Shown here piece by piece: positions 4,901-57,920 of a stretch of 64,000 nucleotides of DNA; the first letter of the stretch is position 1, and every line of letters starts with the position of its first letter. The notes beneath the pieces were generated by a model. The model did not search any database and was not told the origin of the DNA. It was given only the letters and a program-made list of their open reading frames with translations. The DNA is from Phallusia mammillata (lineage: Eukaryota): NCBI GenBank assembly GCA_965637545.1, contig OZ281500.1:7316001-7380000 (forward strand). The letters are read 5' to 3'. The position numbers and the translations under genes are program-made.

Positions 4901-7900
4901 TAACAAAATCGGAAGCTTATCCATTTTTTCTAAATCAGATTGGAAATTCCAGCATTTCGCTCTAATGTGTCGAATTAGAAAACCGCAATAACTTGTCTGG
5001 CTATTTGTGGAGGCCTACGCATGCAATAACAAACCGAACCCAAAACTAAAATGATTTTACCTTCCTTTTTAGGTGAGGCCGTATTAATCAGGGTATTTTT
5101 ATTTGTAGGCAGTGAGTTCATGTTGTTTCCTTTTGCGATATTTGGCTCTGGAGTCTTGCGTTCAGTAGAAGACGACTTGAGCCTGGAGAAGAATGAGGAC
5201 TTCGTTTGGGTTTTCAACAAGGGACTGGTCTTTGTGCCAACATTCAAAGACTTCTTTGGCGAAGAGGTGTGGCTTGGTTGGGATGTAGTGTCGATATTTT
5301 TCGTGTATTGGGCGCTGTTTGAGCTTGGTGTGTCTTGAGTTTTCAGTGTGGGAGCGCTTGCTTTTTGAATGAACGAGTCTATTGAATTGTTATTGACTTG
5401 GTTTTCCGTAGGACCACTGTCTATCGAAACAACACAAAACGTATATTACAAGGAACATTTATTAAATAAAGCTTGTTATGTGTACCCTCCGTAGCCGTTT
5501 GTACAGACGAAGGTTTCGTCGGTGATTTCTGTCTGCTTTGCGTTGACAACATCGAGGCAACATTCTTACTCCCATCTCCTTCAAAATGAAAAACAAAGCA
5601 ATTCAATTCCGTTTCTAACCAACGTGTAACGAGCTCACACAACCCACCTGAAATGCTTTTAAAACTCTTCGAAGAAATTCCGAGCATTGTAATTGGAGGC
5701 GTCCTATGCAAATTATATCATAGTTTTTCTTAAATAAATGCTCACAGTGTACACGGCTTCAAATAGTCATTAGACGGTCGTTCGGCTACGACACCGCGAT
5801 AGGCTTACTATTTGTCAATGGTATACGTTTAGCGACACAAATTTAATCAACGAACAGTTTCTTAAAAATATCTTTGCTAAAAATCGCTTACCAAGCTCCA
5901 GTATCGCGTTTTGCGTCATTAAGAAGTTCGAGCGTTGCCAGGCAACATGCTGTCACGTGATCGGCTTCGTACTTCTCGATACGGCAGGAGCGTGAGACTG
6001 CTCGGCGTCTACTGTGACCGACATGCAGCGTCAAGCCATAAGCGACTCGGTTGTTCTATAAAATCCGACCATAAACAACAAAACAAACGTACTAACAACA
6101 TACAAGATGTTTTCGGTGTGATATTTTGTGGAATTCCTCTGTATTTAAATAACTAAGTTGGCAATCTTTATGATTAAGGCACTAAGGCGATTTATGTGTT
6201 TGTCACATACACACACTACAGTTTCTAGTAAATACTGTAAAAAACACTTACTACAAAATATCCCTTCATAAGTTCAACAATTTGGGATGTGACACTTTCA
6301 ATTTATAAAATATGTTATAAATCCTAAGAACAATATCACATATACTAAATACCTTGAACTTGTCTTTATTAAGTCTTTCCACTAGTTCAGTGATGAGACA
6401 TTGAACCCAGTGCTTGACTTTCGCCCTTGTGTCCAGTGCATCAGAACCAGTAAAGTTTTTACTGCAACCCACAGACTGGGCTATGTGCCGCTCCTTCACT
6501 GGCTCATGATCGATACCATGACACACCTCGCTTAACCATGACCTTACACAAAATGATTTTGAAGGCAAATTAGGCAACAAGATTTAAATTTTTTTCTGAT
6601 ATGAAGCAGTTTGCTTGAATGAAAAACAGCTGAGATTATTTAAGTAGACATATGATTTAGAAACTGGCAGCTTACCCAGTTTTTGCTCCAAATGTGTTAA
6701 CAAGGTTTTCACTGGATATGTCAGCAACTTGGCCTATAAAGTCAACTTTAAAATTCATGGCGAGAGATGCACCAAGTTTTCCACCTAAGTTCCGTCTAGA
6801 AACAAGAACAACAGGATTTGTAACATATTTGTTTTTGCAATTAACACACTTTACCCACATTTTTCCAATTTTTACTTTTTGAAAGAGTTCTGGTACACCA
6901 TCCATGGGCAAAATTGTTTGCTTATTTGGCTTGTTGATGCCACAAGCTAATTTTGACAACATCTAAAAAACATTTACAATCATACAAAATTATGTTAAGG
7001 TCAAGCTTTTTATTTTGATAAAAACACTCCTTACTAATTTTACCTTGTTGTGAGAAATTCCTGCAGAACAGCGAAATGAAGTCTGTTGCCAAATTGCCTG
7101 CCGCATGTTTTCCACTATTGATGCAGCAAAACTTAACCGAGCTACATGCTTGTTGTTGCAGCTTGTAGACAAATATTGCTTCAAACCAATCAGTCTAGAA
7201 TCTAATTCAAAAACTTAAAAATTTTGTCTCGCACATTGCTTTCTACAAACACTTATTTCACAAAACAAAATAGTAGAGAATAATAGATAAAATATGTGTA
7301 TTACTGTAGTTATTTTTGTTTGCAATTTTTGCACCACTTGCCTTGATTTTCAGAATTGAATTCTTTTGGAAATCCAACAACATGTGTATTTTTCAGTTCT
7401 TCTACATCTGGCAAAAAGTCTTTTGAACTATAATAATCAAAGTTGCATTTTTTGAAACAATACAACCATCAATTTGCAACAAACTAATCAACAAAAAGAG
7501 TACACAGGCAAACAACTAGGGTCACCTTGTAATGCTATTAAACTTCTCATTGACAACATTGGTTAAGTCAATGTAAGCTTCATCAATACTGGCTCTCTCC
7601 ACAGTGCCACCAAACTGCAACAAAACGGAGATAACTTCAGCCCCAGCATCACGATACCTGCACATAAAACAACATTTGCTTTGTGTTAAGGTGGACACAT
7701 ATACTAATTAAAATAAGTTAAACCACATTAACCTTGTCAGATCTGCTTTTCCATTTGCAGTTGGAACTTGTAGGAGAACAATTTCTGGACATTTTTGTTT
7801 TGCATCATCACCTCGCATTTGCCTTGTGACGCCTTTAGCTCTAGCCTCATAACTTACAGCAATTATCCTGATGAAATATAAATTGACACTGTGTAATATG

Positions 7901-50284: not shown

Positions 50285-52448
50285 TTAGTGATGACATAAG
50301 CCCTTTTCTGCGCCTTGCCAGGCTTCGTGAAGGCTCGGTATGACTTTATGGGGCATCGACAAACCCTTTTTGCGAGCGCGGCCGTGCATTTGAACAAGGC
50401 TACATAACTTGCAGAAACTGCGAAGGTCATTTTCGCGGTTCTCCATACGTAGCCTGGTTTCAATGCGCTCCGGATACTTATTCCACGTACGCCATTGTAA
50501 ATATTCAGCGTAAGCAGTCTCGTTCTTCACTAGGTAGTTTAGATACTCTACCATTTTGGCAGGTGAATCAAAGTCTTGACTATGGATAAATGACTTGGTA
50601 GGCGCCACTTTTAGAATGTCCTTTTTCCGTGGTCCCCACACGATCGGCACCGCTCCCGAACGCAGTCCATTAAACCAAAATTTCTCAGTAAAGTAATCCT
50701 TGCATCCAATGGAGTTTTCAAACGAGAAATAGAATTTGTATTCCCCCAGTGCTTTGTAGAACTCCAAGGAGTAACGGTTACCAGCCAGTTGTTTGCCTCC
50801 GAAGCAACCGCCGAAGGTGTCGACCTTTGACACAAAAAGATGTTTATTTAGGTAAAGGAACAAAGACGCCCGATTCAAAGTTTTTTCATTCACATTTCAA
50901 CAGAGCAGTCGTATATAATATGAAATTGTGTGATGAAACGCCTGTTCCATGATTGACTTTAACTGTCTTGACTTTATTTGTTGTACCAGTCATCGAATGT
51001 TGACCATGTAAACATTGCATTTTCCACAGGTAAACATGACTGCGCCTTTATGAAGCATAAAATGACAACTTAGGGGAAAGGCAGTACCAGGTAGATGAAA
51101 ACAACGTAAGGTTTTAATAAAAACTACGTAGGTTATTCTAAAGAGTTCAATATATACCTGTAATCCGGCATCCATTAAACTCTTTGCGTAGCTCATGCGA
51201 GGTTGGTAACAGTTGCTAACAGCCCAGGCAGCAATCTTGTCCGAACCGCGCTTTCTTTGCAGTAAATCCTCCAATTCGGTCTCACCGGCTTTCTTCAGCT
51301 CACGCAGTATAAGATTAATGCTACCGTAAGGTGCGTACACATCAGCATCCGTTCGGTAATGAAACGTAAGATTGAAAAAGTTGTTCCATGTGCTACTCCC
51401 ACCACCACTACTGTGCAATGGACTTTCTAAACTCCACCAAGCAAAAAGCTGCCACGGCTGCCTAAAAACGACAACAACAAAAGGCATCATTTAATGTTGC
51501 ATAATGCATTCATCTCATCCTTAATTCGGTTTTGTGGTACACTACTGCAGTACTACAAAACTTTTTTAAAACAGTTTTATGTAAACATGGAAAAGGGCAT
51601 TGGAATAGGGTTTGGAGAAAACCTCAAATGTCAGCAAAGTTCTCTCGCTCGACACTGATTGCACGTCAAACATGCGTCCAGTAGAGCATAGCAGGAATGC
51701 GGGTGATCTGGTCAAGCGTGTCAGTTGTGTCAGTAAGGCCCGGTCTACCCCTTGTCCAGTAGCACTGTGACGCCCGTTAATATGAAAAGGCGTGGGTAAT
51801 TGGGACGTGTCTGTTATTTTCAACGACCTGCTTCTAAAATCCGTAATATGGGGTTTGGTGCCACCCTGGATCGTCATTGAGGGTTATAACGAGAGGTAAA
51901 AAACCGGTTATTTTCTACTGGGCAACAAAACGTTTGCTTTTTGCTTTACATAACAAACTGAGCAAAGGCATACTGAAATTATTTCATTGCGCACAGTATG
52001 TTTTTGTTTACATGTACCTGTTTTGTGGTAAACCGGAACTCGAGAGACCATCGAAAGGGAATACTACAGCGTGAACCTTGTCCATGTTCGATTTGTCGTA
52101 TGTGACATCGCATCGCACGTTGCCCAAACATTCCTGTGGGTTGGCCATATAACCAGGTTTGCCGTTGATGTTCTTCCATATCACTATAGTGTACGGCTTA
52201 CCATGTTCGTCCAGCATATCAGCCTCGTCAAATGTAAAGTCAGAAATGTTTGGCGGTCCCAGCGTAGAAGTTAATAACGGCGAACGAATGTTTATTACAG
52301 CTGGGGAATGTACGGCAAGCTCTGAGTCAGGGTCCACGATTAGCTTTTCGTTGCGATTGCGATATGGTCTCTGCAAGAACAGTACACCAGCTACTAGTAA
52401 TCCTGCCACAAACAGTCGGGATGCAAGTCGTGCAATCTTTTTTTTCAT
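50285..52448 (-). CDS. Alpha-1,3-fucosyltransferase (GT10 family); exons 52448-52018, 51461-51158, 50824-50285
   Basis: Type II TM anchor; NRQPWQLFAWWSLESP, FNLTFHYRTDADVYAPYG, AWAVSNC and YKFYFSFENSIGCKDYFTEKFWFNGLRSGAVPIVWG are GT10 motifs; junctions in phase. Specific orthologue not assignable. Confidence 0.93.
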
Positions 52449-53097
52449 GATGACAGTACGGTACCACAATAAGAATATCCTACAAACGGTAATTAAGGCA
52501 ACTGACGATTATCATAACATGATAGACAGTAACTATAAAGTTGTCAATCCTGGTCTAAAAAATGGACCCTGGAATGTGTAATTGTACTTGTTAATTGTTA
52601 TTTAATCTAAAAATACTCATAAAAGCAGTAAACGCATTTCAAATCGACCCTCCAACAACAACAACAACTAGCTAACTCGAAAATTTAGCATTAAAACTGA
52701 AGATACTTTCCCTAGGTCTCTCATACAGCAGATATCTGACTCCAGCCACAGGTTTGGACAAATACCTGACGGTTAGCAGCTACTCACAAGCCAGTCAGTG
52801 TGCAAACAAGAGAACACGTCGTAAAAAAGGCGAGGACTCATTGCGGGCAAAAAGCAAATCACCAGAGGTTTGTCACCAAGAGAGATTCGGTTCTCGTCGC
52901 ATTGTACAATTCTATTTGTGTAACTTGATAGCGTTTGTGGCGATGATATTAAATCCGTAGATGAATGGTCTGCCCGTGTGGAAGGCGCTGCCACGTTGTT
53001 CGATTCTTGTAAAAACTGAAATCCAGCTGTAAAACCGCTTAAGTTCTTACAAATTAATAATGAGCTTTGGAACACTATATACGGATCCAGTCATAAG

Positions 53098-53272
53098 TTT
53101 AATAATGAAAATAACGGCACAAAAATACGTAAAAAGCGACATGCTTTATTGTTCAGACGTTTCGGCAAATGCTCATATCGCTTATGATGGCATGAGCATT
53201 TGCCAAAACGTCTGAACAATAAAGCAGGTCGCGTTACAGGTCTATTTGGGCCGCGTTATTTTCATTATTAAA
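53098..53272. repeat. Fold-back element (arms about 78 bp) built on a decayed hammerhead motif
   Basis: 53098-53176 is the near-perfect reverse complement of 53192-53272; spacer plus right arm read CTTATGA TGGCA..TGCC AAAAC GTC; the left arm on the minus strand keeps TGCC GAAAC GTC. Confidence 0.85.
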
Positions 53273-54318
53273 TAATGAGCTTGTTTTACGGGTACGGATA
53301 GTACGGGACATTTAGCAAAGTGACAGATCTGCACAAATTGCATGTCGTGCAATGTTTATCGACACTTCTTCGAATTCCGACTTTTGCAACTACAACTTCT
53401 GCTCCAACTGAAATCATTTCAACCTTGTGACTAAACTTAACCGTGTACCTTTAGTAAACAGCTTAAACTCACAAGCAACACATGTCCTTAGTTTTACTAA
53501 TAGGCGGCAGTAATCACACAGCGTTATACGTCACGCTACGACTGCATTCATAACTAAGCCGGTAACAATTACTCACTGCCTTTAAATGTCACTAAGCCAT
53601 TTAGCTTTGGTAAGTTTTTCTGAATAATTTTGCTTTTATGTGGTTTCTTTTGTTTACATTGTTTGCTGCTTGAATCTACAACCTGAATTGATCATCGCTT
53701 TTGTACTCAAAAACTATTTAAAGTTCTATTTTTTTATGAATGAATATGATTATACATGCACATGACTAGATTATAATTTAATTCATGTTGCACCTACAAA
53801 CTTAACAAAGTGTCTTCATGTGCTTACATATGAAAGCAAACCGTAAACAAAGCACCTAACTGAAACCTGCAGTCCTATGCGGTGAACTACGTATCTGCAA
53901 ACAGTAAACCGAAACTTGTTTCTTACATGTTCACCTAAAAACCCACTTAAGTTGATAGCACAGACCTGATGGTCCAATAAACCAACTTATTTTGTAGATT
54001 AACTGGTAATGTCCAGCAATGTCCAGCATCTGCCTAATTCCACCTGCAGCTGCACCCGCTTGCTGTTATACATCAGGAAGTTGGTCGTGCGCTGAATCAG
54101 GTCTGCTGGCGGTAAGTCACAACAAATCACTCTCTGAGGCTTGTGACGTCACAATGTATTTTCTAAACTATTGTTATAGCTATCACACATGAAAGGGTTC
54201 AGCTGTGCTGTGTACATTCCTGCCTCCTGGTGAGTGGTTGACTTATGACTGTGCAAGCTAAGACCTATATCAAAAGCCTGTAACGGACCGTAAAATTGCC
54301 ACTTCAATACCAAGGACA

Positions 54319-57005
54319 ATGGTAAGCGATGTTGCGCCTGGTTTCGGAAGCCAGTTTCAGGAAATTTCTGCGCTTTTAAACAGTATTGTCTCCCAAGTGG
54401 CTGTCAGAAGTTTGGATTATTGTAAAACGAAAACTGTTGATGATGCGCTATGTTTACCAGCTGCCCCTAAAACACGAACGGACGACAAGTGCGAAACTGC
54501 CCATTTTTGCTCTGTTGGTGATGTGTTCAGTTTACCAGGGTGTCAGCAAAACTTTGATTTGACATTAGAAAATACTGTAGCTGAAATTGTCAGTGAACTG
54601 GTCTCTTCAACCATGGTTACCTGCAAATCCAGCAGCCCGATTCAAACATGTTCTTCAAAATTCAGTCAAACAGACAAGCTGTTGCCTGCTTACAAAACGA
54701 AAAGTGAGCAGTTTTCATGGTTGCAAGTCAACAATGAAGTGACATTTCTGATGGAAGACATGCTTGACCGCATTTGTAACTTCAAAGCAATTGAAATCCA
54801 AACAAGCTCAACTGAAAACGGTACTTCCAAACAATGGCCGGATCAAAATATATCTGATCCTACAGAATGTAACAAGATTGCTGATCAATTGCCAAGTAAA
54901 ATAAGTCCGCCATGCAGTAGCTCTTCTAGAGAAGAAAACGCGTGTCCAATGCACATACTCTCAGAAAATGATAGCCCAACTCCAAGCTCCGACATTTTTC
55001 AGGGTGGCGATATATTGGCAAGCTCTAAACAAGACTGTCCACCGCAAGGCTTATCGCCTAAATTAAAAGCTGAAGCTGACCCTTGGTTGCAGTTTGTTTC
55101 AGGCACTCGGAGTCCATCTTGCCACAATGCTGACCCTGTCAACAACGTCGATTTCTTAAAATGTAAATCGGAATGTATCTCGCTTCGTGATTTAGAAAAG
55201 AGCTCTCCAAACGAGATGGAGTTACCGACTGAAAAACGGCAAACATCAACTCTTATCAACACCGCTTCGGGTCAAATCATTTTACGGTACGAGTAGAAAA
55301 AATTGTATGCTATTTGTACATAAAAGCTTGCAACCGTTTGTTTACTTCAGGCCCACCGACATAACAAACAACTCCACCGTCATGAGCTGGAAGCCGTACG
55401 CATGGAAAGAAAGTGCAGGTAGCTATTTAATTTAGGTGTGGTTGCAAAACAAATAGCCATTCTTTCGCAGACGCTTACGCTATCGCTGGAAAATTTCCAA
55501 ACTGCCAAAATGAAATTCCAGAGCGCTCATTACCAACCCCTACCCCAACGCCTGACAACGATCCATCAATCAACTCCCACTTACAGGGAGGAAACGAGTA
55601 TGTTTCTAGCGCGACAAGCACGCCTCAACTGTTCGACAGTTCACAAATACCAAACAACCAACACGACTGCGGAAACATTTTGTCAAAGGATGCAATATCA
55701 CAAACAAATGCTGATGATTTTTTTACTCGTGTTGTTCCGGCTAGTGATTTACTCTGCGACAAAACAATGGTTAACCAGTACAGCGGGACCCAAGGGAGCC
55801 AGGCCAATGACCGATTTGTTCCTGAAGTGGAAAACAACATACAGAACACTTCTTTGTCTCATCAACTTGTTGATAGCCCACATGTCACACCTTGCAGTGT
55901 GAGTAACGTGCCAATATATAATGAAGAACGTTGCTCTAATCACACGAATGCCGAAGAGGATTTAAACGGTAGCATATCAAACCAATGTCGTCCTGATGCT
56001 AACTTTCCAATGACGGACAACGCCGAAAAAAGTGTGCAAAATGTGTCTGTACCAACAAATTGTGAAGAGGACGATGGCCAGATTTTTTACGACCTAGACT
56101 CTGTCACAACATTGCCAAGCGCGAAGGTAAATCAAACACTCACTGTATCAGACGTGCTTAGCCAATTCCAGAATCGGGATTTGGATCAAGAAGTCCCTGT
56201 GACGAAAGATTGTGAACTAACATCAACCCAGGATAGTGACGATGAATCTATGCACCCATGTAATAACAAACAACATGTCAAAATGCAAAAGGAAATTCTA
56301 TGTGACACAAGTGACATGGAGTATGAAACAGAGACGAACAGGTAAACAAGACATTTATTGTTTATGTTGGACAAGCAAGTTGCATCTAGTGGTGTTTCGT
56401 TCTGTTGTTACATTTTTTAAAACCATTTATCGTTGTTTTCTATTGACAGTTTCTACGACAAATTCTATTCGTCAAAGATGCAAAACGCAAGTAAGTTCAA
56501 AATAACCTATGATGGTACAATAAACCTCGTTAAAACCGGATTCGGTAAACCCTGATCTTTGCATAATTCGGACAAAACTTGAGGTTCAAAAGATGTGTAA
56601 AGTGATAAGGCTTTAACTAATCGACTTCGTATACACCGGATCTTCATATAACCGGGAAACATTTTTTGGTCCAAACGGGTCCAGATTAAGCGAGGTTTAC
56701 TGTACTTCCTTATCAACACTATCAACGTTTGCAGTGATTTTGTAAAAAAGCAGCGCTGTGTTGCCAAGAAAACGAATAGCTTGAGCCCATAAAATAAAAT
56801 ACCTTATACATTATGTTTAGGTTGTTGGCAGTCTGTTAATATGTAAGTTTTTGTCTTAAACCATTTAAGTCTCGAAACATTTTTAGGGGCAGAACGTTTG
56901 GAAAGGTTACAGCCGCTTCGAACTTGCGTGCGGCCACGTCGAATAGGACTCTCACGAAAGCACCGGGTATCACCTCTCCATCCTCGCTACACCCCGTACA
57001 AGTAA
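54319..57005 (+). CDS. Large Ser/acidic low-complexity protein with a C-terminal RAD51AP1/RAD51AP2-type RAD51-binding motif; exons 54319-55286, 55351-55418, 55471-56341, 56450-56490, 56887-57005 (true N-terminus may lie upstream)
   Basis: All five exons join in phase; the last exon gives RAERLERLQPLRTCVRPRRIGLSRKHRVSPLHPRYTPYK*, resembling the RAD51AP2 tail ([25 protein letters not shown], from memory). Confidence 0.75.
56518..56702. mobile_element. Tc1/mariner (pogo/Tigger-like) MITE, 185 bp, intronic
   Basis: TIR CAATAAACCTCG / CGAGGTTTACTG flanked by TA on both sides. Confidence 0.85.
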
Positions 57006-57920
57006 ACTAGTATGAGTTGCGTTTTACCAGGTTTGTTGGTTTGCCCTTAGTCGGTTTTCATTTCTTAGTTTCTGTTTCGTATGTGCAAATTTCGTTAGTT
57101 TGTTTCTGATTGCAATTATTTTTGGTACGTTTAAATTATATTTACGTTGTTAAAATAAAAACTATAAATTTGATCTGGCTAAATTGCAAACCGATTCGAA
57201 TAGGCTTCTTTTTTATGTCTTCATACCTCCTCTACCTGTGCCACATTATACTGCTTTACAGCTTAACTTTAGCCTAAATACTAGCCCATTACAGTTAAGC
57301 AAAATAAAGCTAAATTTTCGCAAAAGCGCACAGGCTGTAACACTGGCGTTGAAAGCAGACTGCTGCCGTATACACACAAGCAGGAAAAAAATGTTGATCG
57401 AGTACGTCCGCTTTTGGTTTGCCACAACACGTTGCTAAATTTCCCAGAACTGTCAAGGACATTTCGGTATACATGCGGCTAATTTTCCACGACAATTTAC
57501 ACAAGCGACATTGGTACTCAAAAAACGCTTTTTATTTCTAAACTGAGCCTGTGGTTCGTGGACATAGCCGTCGTAAATTAAACAATTACTTATTTGCAAC
57601 ATACAGTACTTGATCTAGACGCCAGCGCCAAAAGCAAGTGTAGAAAACGTTGTAGAAATACTGCAGCCCAACTCGTAGTACAGTCTTTGTAGGCCAAAGC
57701 CTGTATCTCAACATACTGCACAAGAGGTGCTTTTCTGAAATAACGTCTTGCATGCCGTAGCTGAGATAGCAAGAAAGCTTTGTGACTGGATTGCCTCTGT
57801 CAGCATCTACTTGCCAGACGTAGCAACATCAATTTGTTAGACATGAACAATAAGCCTTTCAGGCAGTCGCGGGGCCCATAATGCATACAGTAAATACGTT
57901 TTTACATTTTTCATACATTT

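What the first reader, a model, noticed from the sequence alone, without database searches (positions are those of the whole stretch)
54319..57005. RAD51AP2-like gene apparently outside vertebrates
A disordered protein of at least 680 aa ends in LQPLRTCVRPRRIGLSRKHRVSPLHP. This matches not only the shared RAD51AP1/2 core (R.GLSR..R...LHP) but also the upstream PL.TC.RP.RIG seen in RAD51AP2, which was described as vertebrate- and meiosis-specific. If the host is a tunicate, this pushes the origin back.
Basis: partly seen in the sequence, partly recalled or inferred. Interest (0 to 1): 0.7.

Follow-up and report, generated by a model that had tools for sequence, protein, structure and literature searches.

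The report
Sea-squirt RAD51AP2-type RAD51-binding gene
A sea-squirt gene encodes a long, probably floppy protein whose last 38 residues carry the peptide that human RAD51AP1 and RAD51AP2 use to grip the DNA-repair enzyme RAD51, which suggests that the RAD51AP2 type, described as vertebrate-only, is older than vertebrates.

Summary
The last exon (56887-57005, +) encodes a RAD51-interacting motif that scores 32.2 bits on Pfam PF15696, against a cut-off of 25. Only two places in the 240-Mb genome pass that cut-off.

An all-GT..AG, in-frame model joins five exons into a 688-codon gene (54319-57005). No RNA junctions could be obtained. One relative in an unidentified ENA assembly has the same exon order, the same intron phases and three shared short motifs.

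The genome is a tunicate's: it carries the tunicate-type cellulose synthase plus GH6 gene.

The second PF15696 locus, 0.72 Mb away, looks like RAD51AP1. It has WNPP just upstream of LRIGLSR. So the window gene is a separate paralogue.

Three features point to the RAD51AP2 type:
- a very large 5' coding region;
- a tiny penultimate exon followed by a motif-only last exon;
- Arg-Pro just before R-x-GLS, as in the mammalian SRPI.

Every RAD51-contacting residue known from the human RAD51AP1 structure is kept. Six of the seven matching RAD51 pocket residues are identical in the tunicate RAD51.

Orthology to vertebrate RAD51AP2, meiotic expression and binding itself remain untested. This is a new member of a known kind, of moderate interest. 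The scan's notes hold no earlier record of it.

The parts
54319..55286 (+). Exon A: first coding exon from the first ATG, 322 codons plus 2 nt. Ser/Thr-rich and acidic. Donor is CG|GTACGA.
   Evidence: Open frame 54262-55293. A contig of a possible RNA run covers 54186-54389 unspliced. The divergent fucosyltransferase neighbour ends near 52469. The donor position and phase 2 are identical in the relative L006.
55252..55286 (+). Conserved short motif LINTASGQIIL(R) at the very end of exon A. It resembles a BRC repeat (TASG core) but has Ile where BRC repeats have Phe.
   Evidence: Same motif, LINTASGQLIV(R), at the same exon end in L006. This is the only part of the big exon that aligns. There is no Pfam BRC match. 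A predicted complex with DMC1 gave no answer.
55351..55418 (+). Exon B, 68 nt, encoding PTDITNNSTVMSWKPYAWKESA with a conserved PT...WKP-aromatic-x-WK motif. It is flanked by introns of 64 nt and 52 nt.
   Evidence: GT..AG on both sides restores the frame between the two long ORFs. L006 has the matching exon CPTLETVQEKKTIQWKPFPWKQN with the same phases.
55471..56341 (+). Exon C, 871 nt (289 full codons). Very acidic (net -31) and Asn/Ser-rich. Donor is AG|GTAAAC, phase 2.
   Evidence: Open frame 55431-56342; composition. The L006 counterpart, 5125-5686, is also acidic and ends in phase 2.
56450..56490 (+). Predicted 41-nt micro-exon encoding (S)FYDKFYSSKMQNA(R). It is needed to bring the last exon into frame.
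   Evidence: It is the best of 21 stop-free AG..GT candidates of length 3n+2: pyrimidine-rich acceptor and a GTAAGT donor. No RNA support, and no recognisable counterpart in L006, although L006 also needs a 3n+2 exon here.
56556..56704 (.). High-copy short repeat inside the last intron. A related copy lies at 53100-53180, upstream of the gene.
   Evidence: Word depth of 10^4-10^5 in DNA contigs, with many joints and loose ends.
56887..57005 (+). Last exon: 2 nt, 38 codons and the stop. Strongly basic (net +9).
   Evidence: Acceptor TTTTTAG|GG. It has the same phase 1 and the same distance (6 residues) before LQPL as in L006/P0002. AATAAA lies at 57154 and 57303.
56904..56984 (+). RAD51-interacting motif (Pfam PF15696). 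Its core is VRPRRIGLSRKHRVSPLHP, equivalent to human Site-M (R-I-G-L-S-R) and Site-C (L-H).
   Evidence: 32.2 bits against a cut-off of 25. The genome scan gives 31.4 bits at the same place. It aligns to human RAD51AP1 chains 9qnc_B and 9qn8_B. The contact residues are taken from PMC12704761 and PMC1636435.

Best explanation
This is a real five-exon tunicate gene (54319-57005, +) encoding a protein of about 688 residues. The body is acidic and probably mostly disordered. The last 38 residues, encoded by their own short exon, form the RAD51-binding peptide of the RAD51AP1/RAD51AP2 family.

[quoted passage not shown] The Leu-His pair nine residues later would sit in a shallow groove on the ATPase core. 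That would tether the long body to RAD51 filaments.

The same genome has a separate RAD51AP1-type gene. This gene has the very large 5' coding region, the tiny penultimate exon and the Arg-Pro flank of mammalian RAD51AP2. It is therefore most likely the tunicate counterpart of RAD51AP2, and probably acts in meiotic recombination.

Shown: the motif, the frame-consistent gene model, the second paralogue, conservation in one other species, and the tunicate host. Inferred: splicing, RAD51 binding, orthology to RAD51AP2, and a meiotic role.
For: Motif and uniqueness:
- PF15696 is above the cut-off, and only two such loci exist in 240 Mb.
- The residues whose mutation abolishes binding in human RAD51AP1 (R316, L319, L328, H329) and RAD51AP2 (L1134, L1143, H1144) are all present with the same 9-residue spacing.
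- The cryo-EM contacts R333, L334, L336, L345 and H346 correspond to R, I, L, L and H here.
- The tunicate RAD51 (multi-exon, C7:1.955 Mb) is identical to human RAD51 at F92, R95, I100, T119, Q145 and D184, which line those pockets.

Gene model:
- All junctions are GT..AG and in frame.
- The only relative found (L006/L007, ENA assembly) has a 640-codon exon, a WKP exon, an acidic exon and the motif exon in the same order. Its intron phases 2, 1, 2 ... 1 fall at the same residues.

RAD51AP2 type:
- Human RAD51AP2 has one exon of 1083 aa followed by exons of 27 aa and 49 aa, the last encoding the motif.
- The mouse and human SRPI directly precedes R-x-GLS and is required for RAD51 binding. Here it reads VRPR, and RRPL in P0002. 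Human RAD51AP1 has SQSL and the tunicate RAD51AP1-like gene has PSTL.
- The other locus (L001) carries KWNPP 23 residues before LRIGLSR, like the human WVPP Site-N.

Host: the cellulose-synthase GT2 and GH6 matches are adjacent on one strand.
Against: - No RNA junctions were found. The runs that hold the locus are DNA, and the one possible RNA contig covers only 54186-54389.
- The micro-exon has no recognisable counterpart in the relative.
- The body shows no significant similarity even to that relative outside three short motifs. It could not be compared with vertebrate RAD51AP2 at all. Three word-index searches and one exhaustive HMMER search returned only the ENA relative.
- The Tyr-Leu-Lis-type tail, i.e. 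the Tyr-Leu-Lys that follows LHP in vertebrate RAD51AP2, is not kept as such.
- The two paralogues lie on one chromosome 0.72 Mb apart, which also fits a local tunicate-lineage duplication.
- Two short introns split what is a single exon in human.
Confidence: 0.6

Rival explanations
1. A tunicate-lineage paralogue, not an orthologue of vertebrate RAD51AP2. In this reading the RAD51AP1 terminal exon was duplicated locally or exon-shuffled onto an unrelated disordered gene. The likeness to RAD51AP2 in long body and RP flank would then be convergent. The protein would still bind RAD51 through the same peptide.
For: - Both motif loci lie on contig C7, 0.72 Mb apart.
- In both, the last intron is phase 1 and lies 17-19 residues before R-I-G-L-S.
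- The body has no detectable similarity to anything outside one relative.
- The LHP-Tyr-Leu-Lys tail of RAD51AP2 is not kept.
Against: - The gene is shared with a distant organism (GC 31%, body unalignable), so it is not a recent event.
- The RP flank matches the functionally required mammalian SRPI.
- The three-part 3' architecture matches human RAD51AP2.
Confidence: 0.3
2. The gene model is wrong. In this reading the motif exon belongs to another transcript or is a relic, and the two long ORFs are a separate gene or a decaying one.
For: No splice junctions were seen in any run. The frame can be restored only with a predicted 41-nt exon. The RAD51AP1-like copy of the motif carries an in-frame TGA, which shows that such exons can decay here.
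Against: - The two longest ORFs of the window and the motif exon lie in order on one strand within 2.7 kb.
- All junctions are canonical and in frame.
- Exon order, junction residues and all comparable intron phases are conserved in L006/L007.
- The motif exon itself is intact and above the Pfam cut-off in both species.
Confidence: 0.07
3. A chance match of a short basic peptide to a 39-position profile.
For: The profile is short. In the control genomes it gives sub-threshold hits in 3 of 14.
Against: Only 2 hits above the cut-off in 240 Mb, both with the full R-x-G-L-S-R...L-H spacing. The motif is conserved at 58% identity in a relative whose body has otherwise diverged beyond recognition.
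Confidence: 0.02

Closest known systems
RAD51AP2 (human and mouse; Kovalenko et al. 2006, PMC1636435; Ma et al. 2022, PMC8754306)
   Same: - C-terminal RAD51-interacting motif encoded by its own short last exon, preceded by a tiny exon and a very large 5' coding region.
- Arg-Pro directly before R-x-GLS (mammalian SRPI).
- The Leu and Leu-His residues that are essential for RAD51 binding.
- A strongly basic tail on an otherwise unrelated long body.
   Different: - 688 residues rather than 976-1159.
- The large coding region is split by two short introns (64 nt and 52 nt).
- The penultimate exon encodes 14 aa rather than 27, and the last exon 38 aa rather than 49.
- The tail after LHP reads RYTPYK, not Tyr-Leu-Lys.
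- Similarity of the body, meiosis-specific expression and RAD51 binding are all untested.
- The host is a tunicate.
RAD51AP1 (human; PDB 9qnc and 9qn8; PMC12704761)
   Same: The same Site-M (LRLGLSR against RRIGLSR) and Site-C (LH) peptide with identical spacing. It aligns directly to the solved chain.
   Different: - No WVPP-type Site-N within 30 residues upstream of the motif.
- About twice as long, and acidic rather than Lys-rich.
- A different, RAD51AP1-like gene exists elsewhere in this genome (L001), with KWNPP plus LRIGLSR.
BRC repeats of BRCA2 (FxTASGK A-motif)
   Same: The conserved exon-A end, I-N-T-A-S-G-Q-I-I, shares the TASG core. A hydrophobic cluster (M-S-W) lies about 16-18 residues later, similar to the spacing of the BRC LFDE module (BRC4 peptide in PMC11229353).
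   Different: Ile replaces the essential Phe. There is no Pfam BRC match when searched exon by exon. The predicted complex with DMC1 gave no answer. This is a lead only.

Membership tests
RAD51_interact motif family (Pfam PF15696; RAD51AP1 and RAD51AP2) | Profile score above the curated cut-off | tested here: met
   32.2 bits against 25. 31.4 bits in the genome scan, where it is one of only two loci above the cut-off.
RAD51_interact motif family (Pfam PF15696; RAD51AP1 and RAD51AP2) | Residues needed for RAD51 binding: Arg and Leu of R-x-G-L-S, and Leu-His nine residues later | tested here: met
   R-I-G-L-S-R-K-H-R-V-S-P-L-H-P read from the window. The residue list comes from PMC1636435 and PMC12704761.
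RAD51_interact motif family (Pfam PF15696; RAD51AP1 and RAD51AP2) | Motif at the extreme C terminus, encoded entirely by a short last exon | tested here: met
   The last exon, 56887-57005, encodes 38 residues, and the motif ends 6 residues before the stop. The same holds in L001 and L006.
RAD51_interact motif family (Pfam PF15696; RAD51AP1 and RAD51AP2) | Physical binding to RAD51 | not testable with these tools
   The tunicate RAD51 is multi-exon, and joined models were not to be submitted. Only conservation of six of the seven named pocket residues was checked; D50 was not checked.
RAD51AP2 | Gene architecture: very large 5' coding exon, tiny exon, then a motif-only last exon | tested here: met
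   Exons A to C cover 1907 nt, interrupted by two short introns, followed by a 41-nt exon and a 116-nt coding last exon. Human RAD51AP2 has 1083 aa, 27 aa and 49 aa. The splicing is predicted, not seen in RNA.
RAD51AP2 | SRPI-type flank directly before R-x-GLS, required for RAD51 binding in mouse and human | tested here: inconclusive
   The window reads VRPR, so Arg-Pro is kept while Ser and Ile are not; P0002 reads RRPL. The mammalian positions were derived from residue numbers in PMC8754306 and PMC1636435, not from an alignment.
RAD51AP2 | Tyr-Leu-Lys directly after LHP | tested here: not met
   The window reads LHP-RYTPYK and P0002 reads LHH-DHLS. The feature is described in PMC1636435, where it makes a modest contribution to binding.
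RAD51AP2 | Sequence similarity of the long body to vertebrate RAD51AP2 | not tested
   No vertebrate RAD51AP2 sequence could be retrieved. The searches returned only the ENA relative. The length bands and the weak score of a short motif limit what those blanks mean.
RAD51AP2 | Meiosis-restricted expression | not testable with these tools
   No run on record as RNA holds the locus.
RAD51AP1 | WVPP-type Site-N 20-30 residues upstream of the RAD51 motif | tested here: not met
   No [WF]xPP in the coding frames of the window gene. It is present as KWNPP at the other locus, L001.
BRC repeat (Pfam PF00634) | Profile match and the Phe of FxxA | tested here: not met
   No Pfam hit at E up to 10 for the exon-A tails of either species. 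Ile occupies the Phe position.

The most novel reading that the evidence does not exclude
The RAD51AP1/RAD51AP2 split predates the tunicate-vertebrate divergence. The ancestral RAD51AP2 would then be a multi-motif recombinase adaptor that combines the C-terminal Site-M/Site-C peptide with a degenerate BRC-like A-motif (I-N-TASG-Q) and a W-K-P aromatic motif about 20 residues later. These are two further conserved short motifs that nobody has looked for in vertebrate RAD51AP2.
Probability: 0.15. Interest if true: 0.6.

Novelty: new member of a known kind. Interest (0 to 1): 0.42.

Why it matters
The papers I could read call RAD51AP2 vertebrate- and meiosis-specific. Its only mapped function is RAD51 binding through its C terminus, and its only known role is securing the X-Y crossover in mouse.

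A tunicate counterpart sitting next to a separate RAD51AP1-type gene would date the two paralogues to before the vertebrate genome duplications. It would also show that the protein did not arise for mammalian sex-chromosome pairing.

The body has diverged beyond recognition between two invertebrate species, yet three short motifs survive: LINTASGQ, WKP-aromatic and the RAD51 peptide. Those islands are concrete candidates for the unknown functional sites of the long RAD51AP2 body. They can be tested in an organism whose eggs and gonads are easy to work with.

Tried and rejected
- **Exhaustive HMMER search with the 38-residue tail.** It gave 2 hits: one spurious repeat protein and P0002. The motif is too short to reach significance against 1.8 billion proteins, so the blank says nothing about vertebrate kin.
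- **Word-index searches.** I used exon A, an alignment of terminal exons and the LINTASGQ end of the 640-aa ORF. They returned only the query's own or allelic sequences. Length bands exclude most full-length proteins.
- **Other look-ups.** Atlas feature search of exon A and of P0003 gave no usable hit. The cluster look-up gave no names. The metagenome scan with the 52-aa open frame found nothing.
- **Reads.** X2 and X3 are DNA contigs collinear with the window. X1, possibly RNA, gives one 204-nt contig at 54186-54389. There are no splice junctions, so expression and splicing stay open.
- **Micro-exon counterpart in L006/L007.** None is convincing.
- **BRC-repeat idea for the exon-A end.** There is no Pfam match.
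- **Complex prediction, exon-A tail against the intronless DMC1.** The verdict was 'no answer', score 0.01. This is evidence neither for nor against binding.
- **Pairing the C-terminal peptide with RAD51.** Not attempted, because RAD51 is split over at least four exons.
- **Joined spliced protein.** It was never built, searched or folded. Exons were handled one by one by reference.
- **Supplement of PMC8754306.** The alignment figure is not held as text.
Full report
**What is in the sequence**

On the + strand, 54262-55293 is an open frame of 344 codons with its first ATG at 54319. A second frame, 55431-56342, has 304 codons. They are the two longest open frames in the 64-kb window.

Pfam's RAD51_interact model (PF15696) matches 56904-56984 at 32.2 bits against a curated cut-off of 25. 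A six-frame scan of the whole 240-Mb genome with the same model finds only two places over the cut-off: this one, and one 0.72 Mb downstream on the same contig.

**Gene model**

The frames can be joined with canonical GT..AG introns only. The model is:
- exon A, 54319-55286
- a 64-nt intron
- exon B, 55351-55418
- a 52-nt intron
- exon C, 55471-56341
- a 108-nt intron
- a 41-nt micro-exon, 56450-56490
- a 396-nt intron
- the last exon, 56887-57005

The split codons read R, D, S and R. The total is 2064 coding nt, or 688 codons. Among 21 stop-free candidates for the frame-restoring internal exon, the 41-nt exon has by far the best sites: a pyrimidine-rich acceptor and a GTAAGT donor.

I did not build, search or fold the joined protein. 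Each exon was handled by reference.

The upstream neighbour is a divergently oriented GT10 fucosyltransferase at 50285-52469 (-). Exon A is therefore plausibly the first exon. AATAAA lies 150 and 300 nt after the stop.

**RNA evidence is missing**

Two runs hold the locus, but they are DNA contigs collinear with the genome. One possible RNA run gives a single unspliced 204-nt contig over 54186-54389. No junction was seen. Splicing and expression are therefore inferred, not shown.

**Comparative support**

An exhaustive HMMER search with the 38-residue tail returned one true relative. It is a 47-residue called ORF (P0002) from an ENA assembly of unknown organism, present on two near-identical contigs. 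Its genomic context (L006, GC 31%) has the same layout on one strand:
- a 640-codon ORF ending in LINTASGQLIV-R; here exon A ends in LINTASGQIIL-R
- a 55-nt intron
- a small exon, CPTLETVQEKKTIQWKPFPWKQN; here PTDITNNSTVMSWKPYAWKESA
- an acidic exon of 186 full codons
- the motif exon

The intron phases are 2, 1, 2 ... 1 in both species. The first intron splits the same Arg codon, and the last acceptor lies six residues before LQPL in both. Both species also need a missing 3n+2 exon before the last one, but I could not recognise it in L006.

Outside these islands the two proteins do not align better than shuffled sequence. This is the usual picture for a disordered protein held together by short linear motifs. 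It supports introns 1 and 2 and the last acceptor. It also shows that the gene is not a recent accident.

**The host**

Earlier notes of this scan call the genome a sea squirt, Phallusia mammillata. I tested the tunicate part. A cellulose-synthase GT2 match (C3:28483830-28484297, -) lies 3 kb from a GH6 match (C3:28480812-28481030, -) on the same strand. From established knowledge, this fused arrangement among animals is the tunicate CesA gene. Introns of 52-64 nt and a 240-Mb genome also fit. The species name itself I did not verify.

**A second paralogue**

The other PF15696 locus (L001) has a penultimate exon ending in PLPQRKWNPP. After an 88-nt phase-1 intron comes a last exon reading ...KSPSTLRIGLSRNV-TGA-LKPLHPAASTKT.

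Human RAD51AP1 has KPKWVPP (Site-N, DMC1 and RAD51 binding) 28 residues before LRLGLSR, then ...RVKPLHP. L001 is therefore the RAD51AP1-type gene. Oddly, in this assembly it carries a stop at the Arg between Site-M and Site-C.

The window gene has no [WF]xPP in its coding frames. It is about twice as long, and acidic rather than basic. The genome thus has two distinct members of the family.

**Why RAD51AP2-type**

Kovalenko et al. describe human RAD51AP2 as one exon of 1083 aa followed by exons of 27 aa and 49 aa. The last exon encodes the whole RAD51-binding region, the body has no homology to anything, and the tail is strongly basic. The window gene has the same plan, with exons of 14 aa and 38 aa at the end and a tail of net charge +9.

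Ma et al. show that deleting SRPI (mouse 955-958) abolishes RAD51 binding and axis loading. SRPI is the first four of the C-terminal 22 residues in mouse, which correspond to the human C33 fragment. Combined with the residue numbers of the 2006 paper (L1134 in GLS), SRPI sits immediately before R-x-G-L-S.

The corresponding four residues are:

| Gene | Four residues before R-x-GLS |
|---|---|
| Window gene | VRPR |
| P0002 (ENA relative) | RRPL |
| Human RAD51AP1 | SQSL |
| Tunicate RAD51AP1-type gene (L001) | PSTL |

The Arg-Pro therefore sorts with RAD51AP2. This rests on arithmetic from two papers, not on an alignment, because no vertebrate RAD51AP2 sequence could be retrieved. The Tyr-Leu-Lys that follows LHP in vertebrate RAD51AP2 is not kept as such.

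**Likely mechanism**

- R333 pairs with D50.
- L334 is surrounded by F92 and R95.
- L336 is surrounded by I100 and T119.
- Site-C residues L345 and H346 enter a groove at Q145 and D184.

The window peptide keeps R, I, L, L and H at these positions with identical spacing. The tunicate RAD51 gene (multi-exon, C7:1.955 Mb, -) is identical to human RAD51 at F92, R95, I100, T119, Q145 and D184. D50 was not checked.

I therefore expect the tail to bind RAD51 filaments one peptide per protomer and to tether the acidic body there. In mouse, this interaction loads RAD51AP2 onto meiotic axes. A meiotic role here is inference only. DMC1 is present as an intronless 338-codon gene.

**Two further conserved motifs**

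The exon-A end, I-N-T-A-S-G-Q-I-I, shares the TASG core of BRC repeats (BRC4 peptide in PMC11229353). The W-K-P aromatic cluster follows at about the spacing of the second BRC module. But Ile replaces the essential Phe, Pfam's BRC model does not match exon by exon, and a predicted complex of the exon-A tail with DMC1 gave no answer. This stays a lead.

**Novelty**

The papers I could read call RAD51AP1, RAD51AP2 and NUCKS1 vertebrate-specific. No paper in the library links RAD51AP1 or RAD51AP2 to Ciona. A sea-cucumber genome paper analyses a RAD51AP1 gene, so the family is not strictly vertebrate-only in annotation practice.

I found no report of a RAD51AP2-type gene outside vertebrates, and the scan's own notes hold none. 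I could not check public gene annotations of tunicates.

I rate this a new member of a known kind, of moderate interest. The main open points are RNA proof of the model and true orthology against a tunicate-lineage duplication.

Noticed in passing
L001:1312-1605 (G000:C7:8091679-8091972, +): A RAD51AP1-type gene. Its penultimate exon ends in KWNPP (like the human WVPP Site-N). Its last exon reads ...LRIGLSRNV-TGA-LKPLHP..., with an in-frame TGA at the position of the conserved Arg. That would remove the Leu-His RAD51 contact. It could be an allele, an assembly error or a decaying gene.
   Followed up: partly
L011:1228-2244 (G000:C1:10461949-10462965, +): DMC1 is a single intronless 338-codon ORF (608 bits to human DMC1), whereas RAD51 on C7:1955285-1956750 (-) is split into at least four exons. 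The DMC1 gene may be a retrogene that replaced the original.
   Followed up: partly
window 53100-53180 and 56556-56704: A very high-copy short repeat (word depth 10^4-10^5 in DNA contigs). Its copies lie upstream of the gene and inside its last intron, and some contigs join the two on opposite strands. It looks like a MITE-type element.
   Followed up: no
window 50285-52469 (-): A GT10 fucosyltransferase gene in three ORF pieces (Glyco_transf_10 at 150 bits, plus the N-terminal domain), transcribed away from the RAD51AP2-type gene.
   Followed up: partly
G000:C3:28480812-28484297 (-) (L008, L009): A cellulose-synthase GT2 match and a GH6 match 3 kb apart on one strand: the tunicate-type CesA gene. 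I used it here as a marker of host identity. A second GT2 match lies at C6:17812787-17813236.
   Followed up: partly
L006:2364-10144 and L007 (ENA ERZ25067582, two contigs 99.4-99.5% alike): The only relative of the window gene that I found lies in an assembly filed as a metagenome. It is on two long contigs at about 23x that look like haplotypes of an AT-rich animal genome, with mariner and reverse-transcriptase genes nearby. The organism was not identified.
   Followed up: partly
I did not examine it.
   Followed up: no
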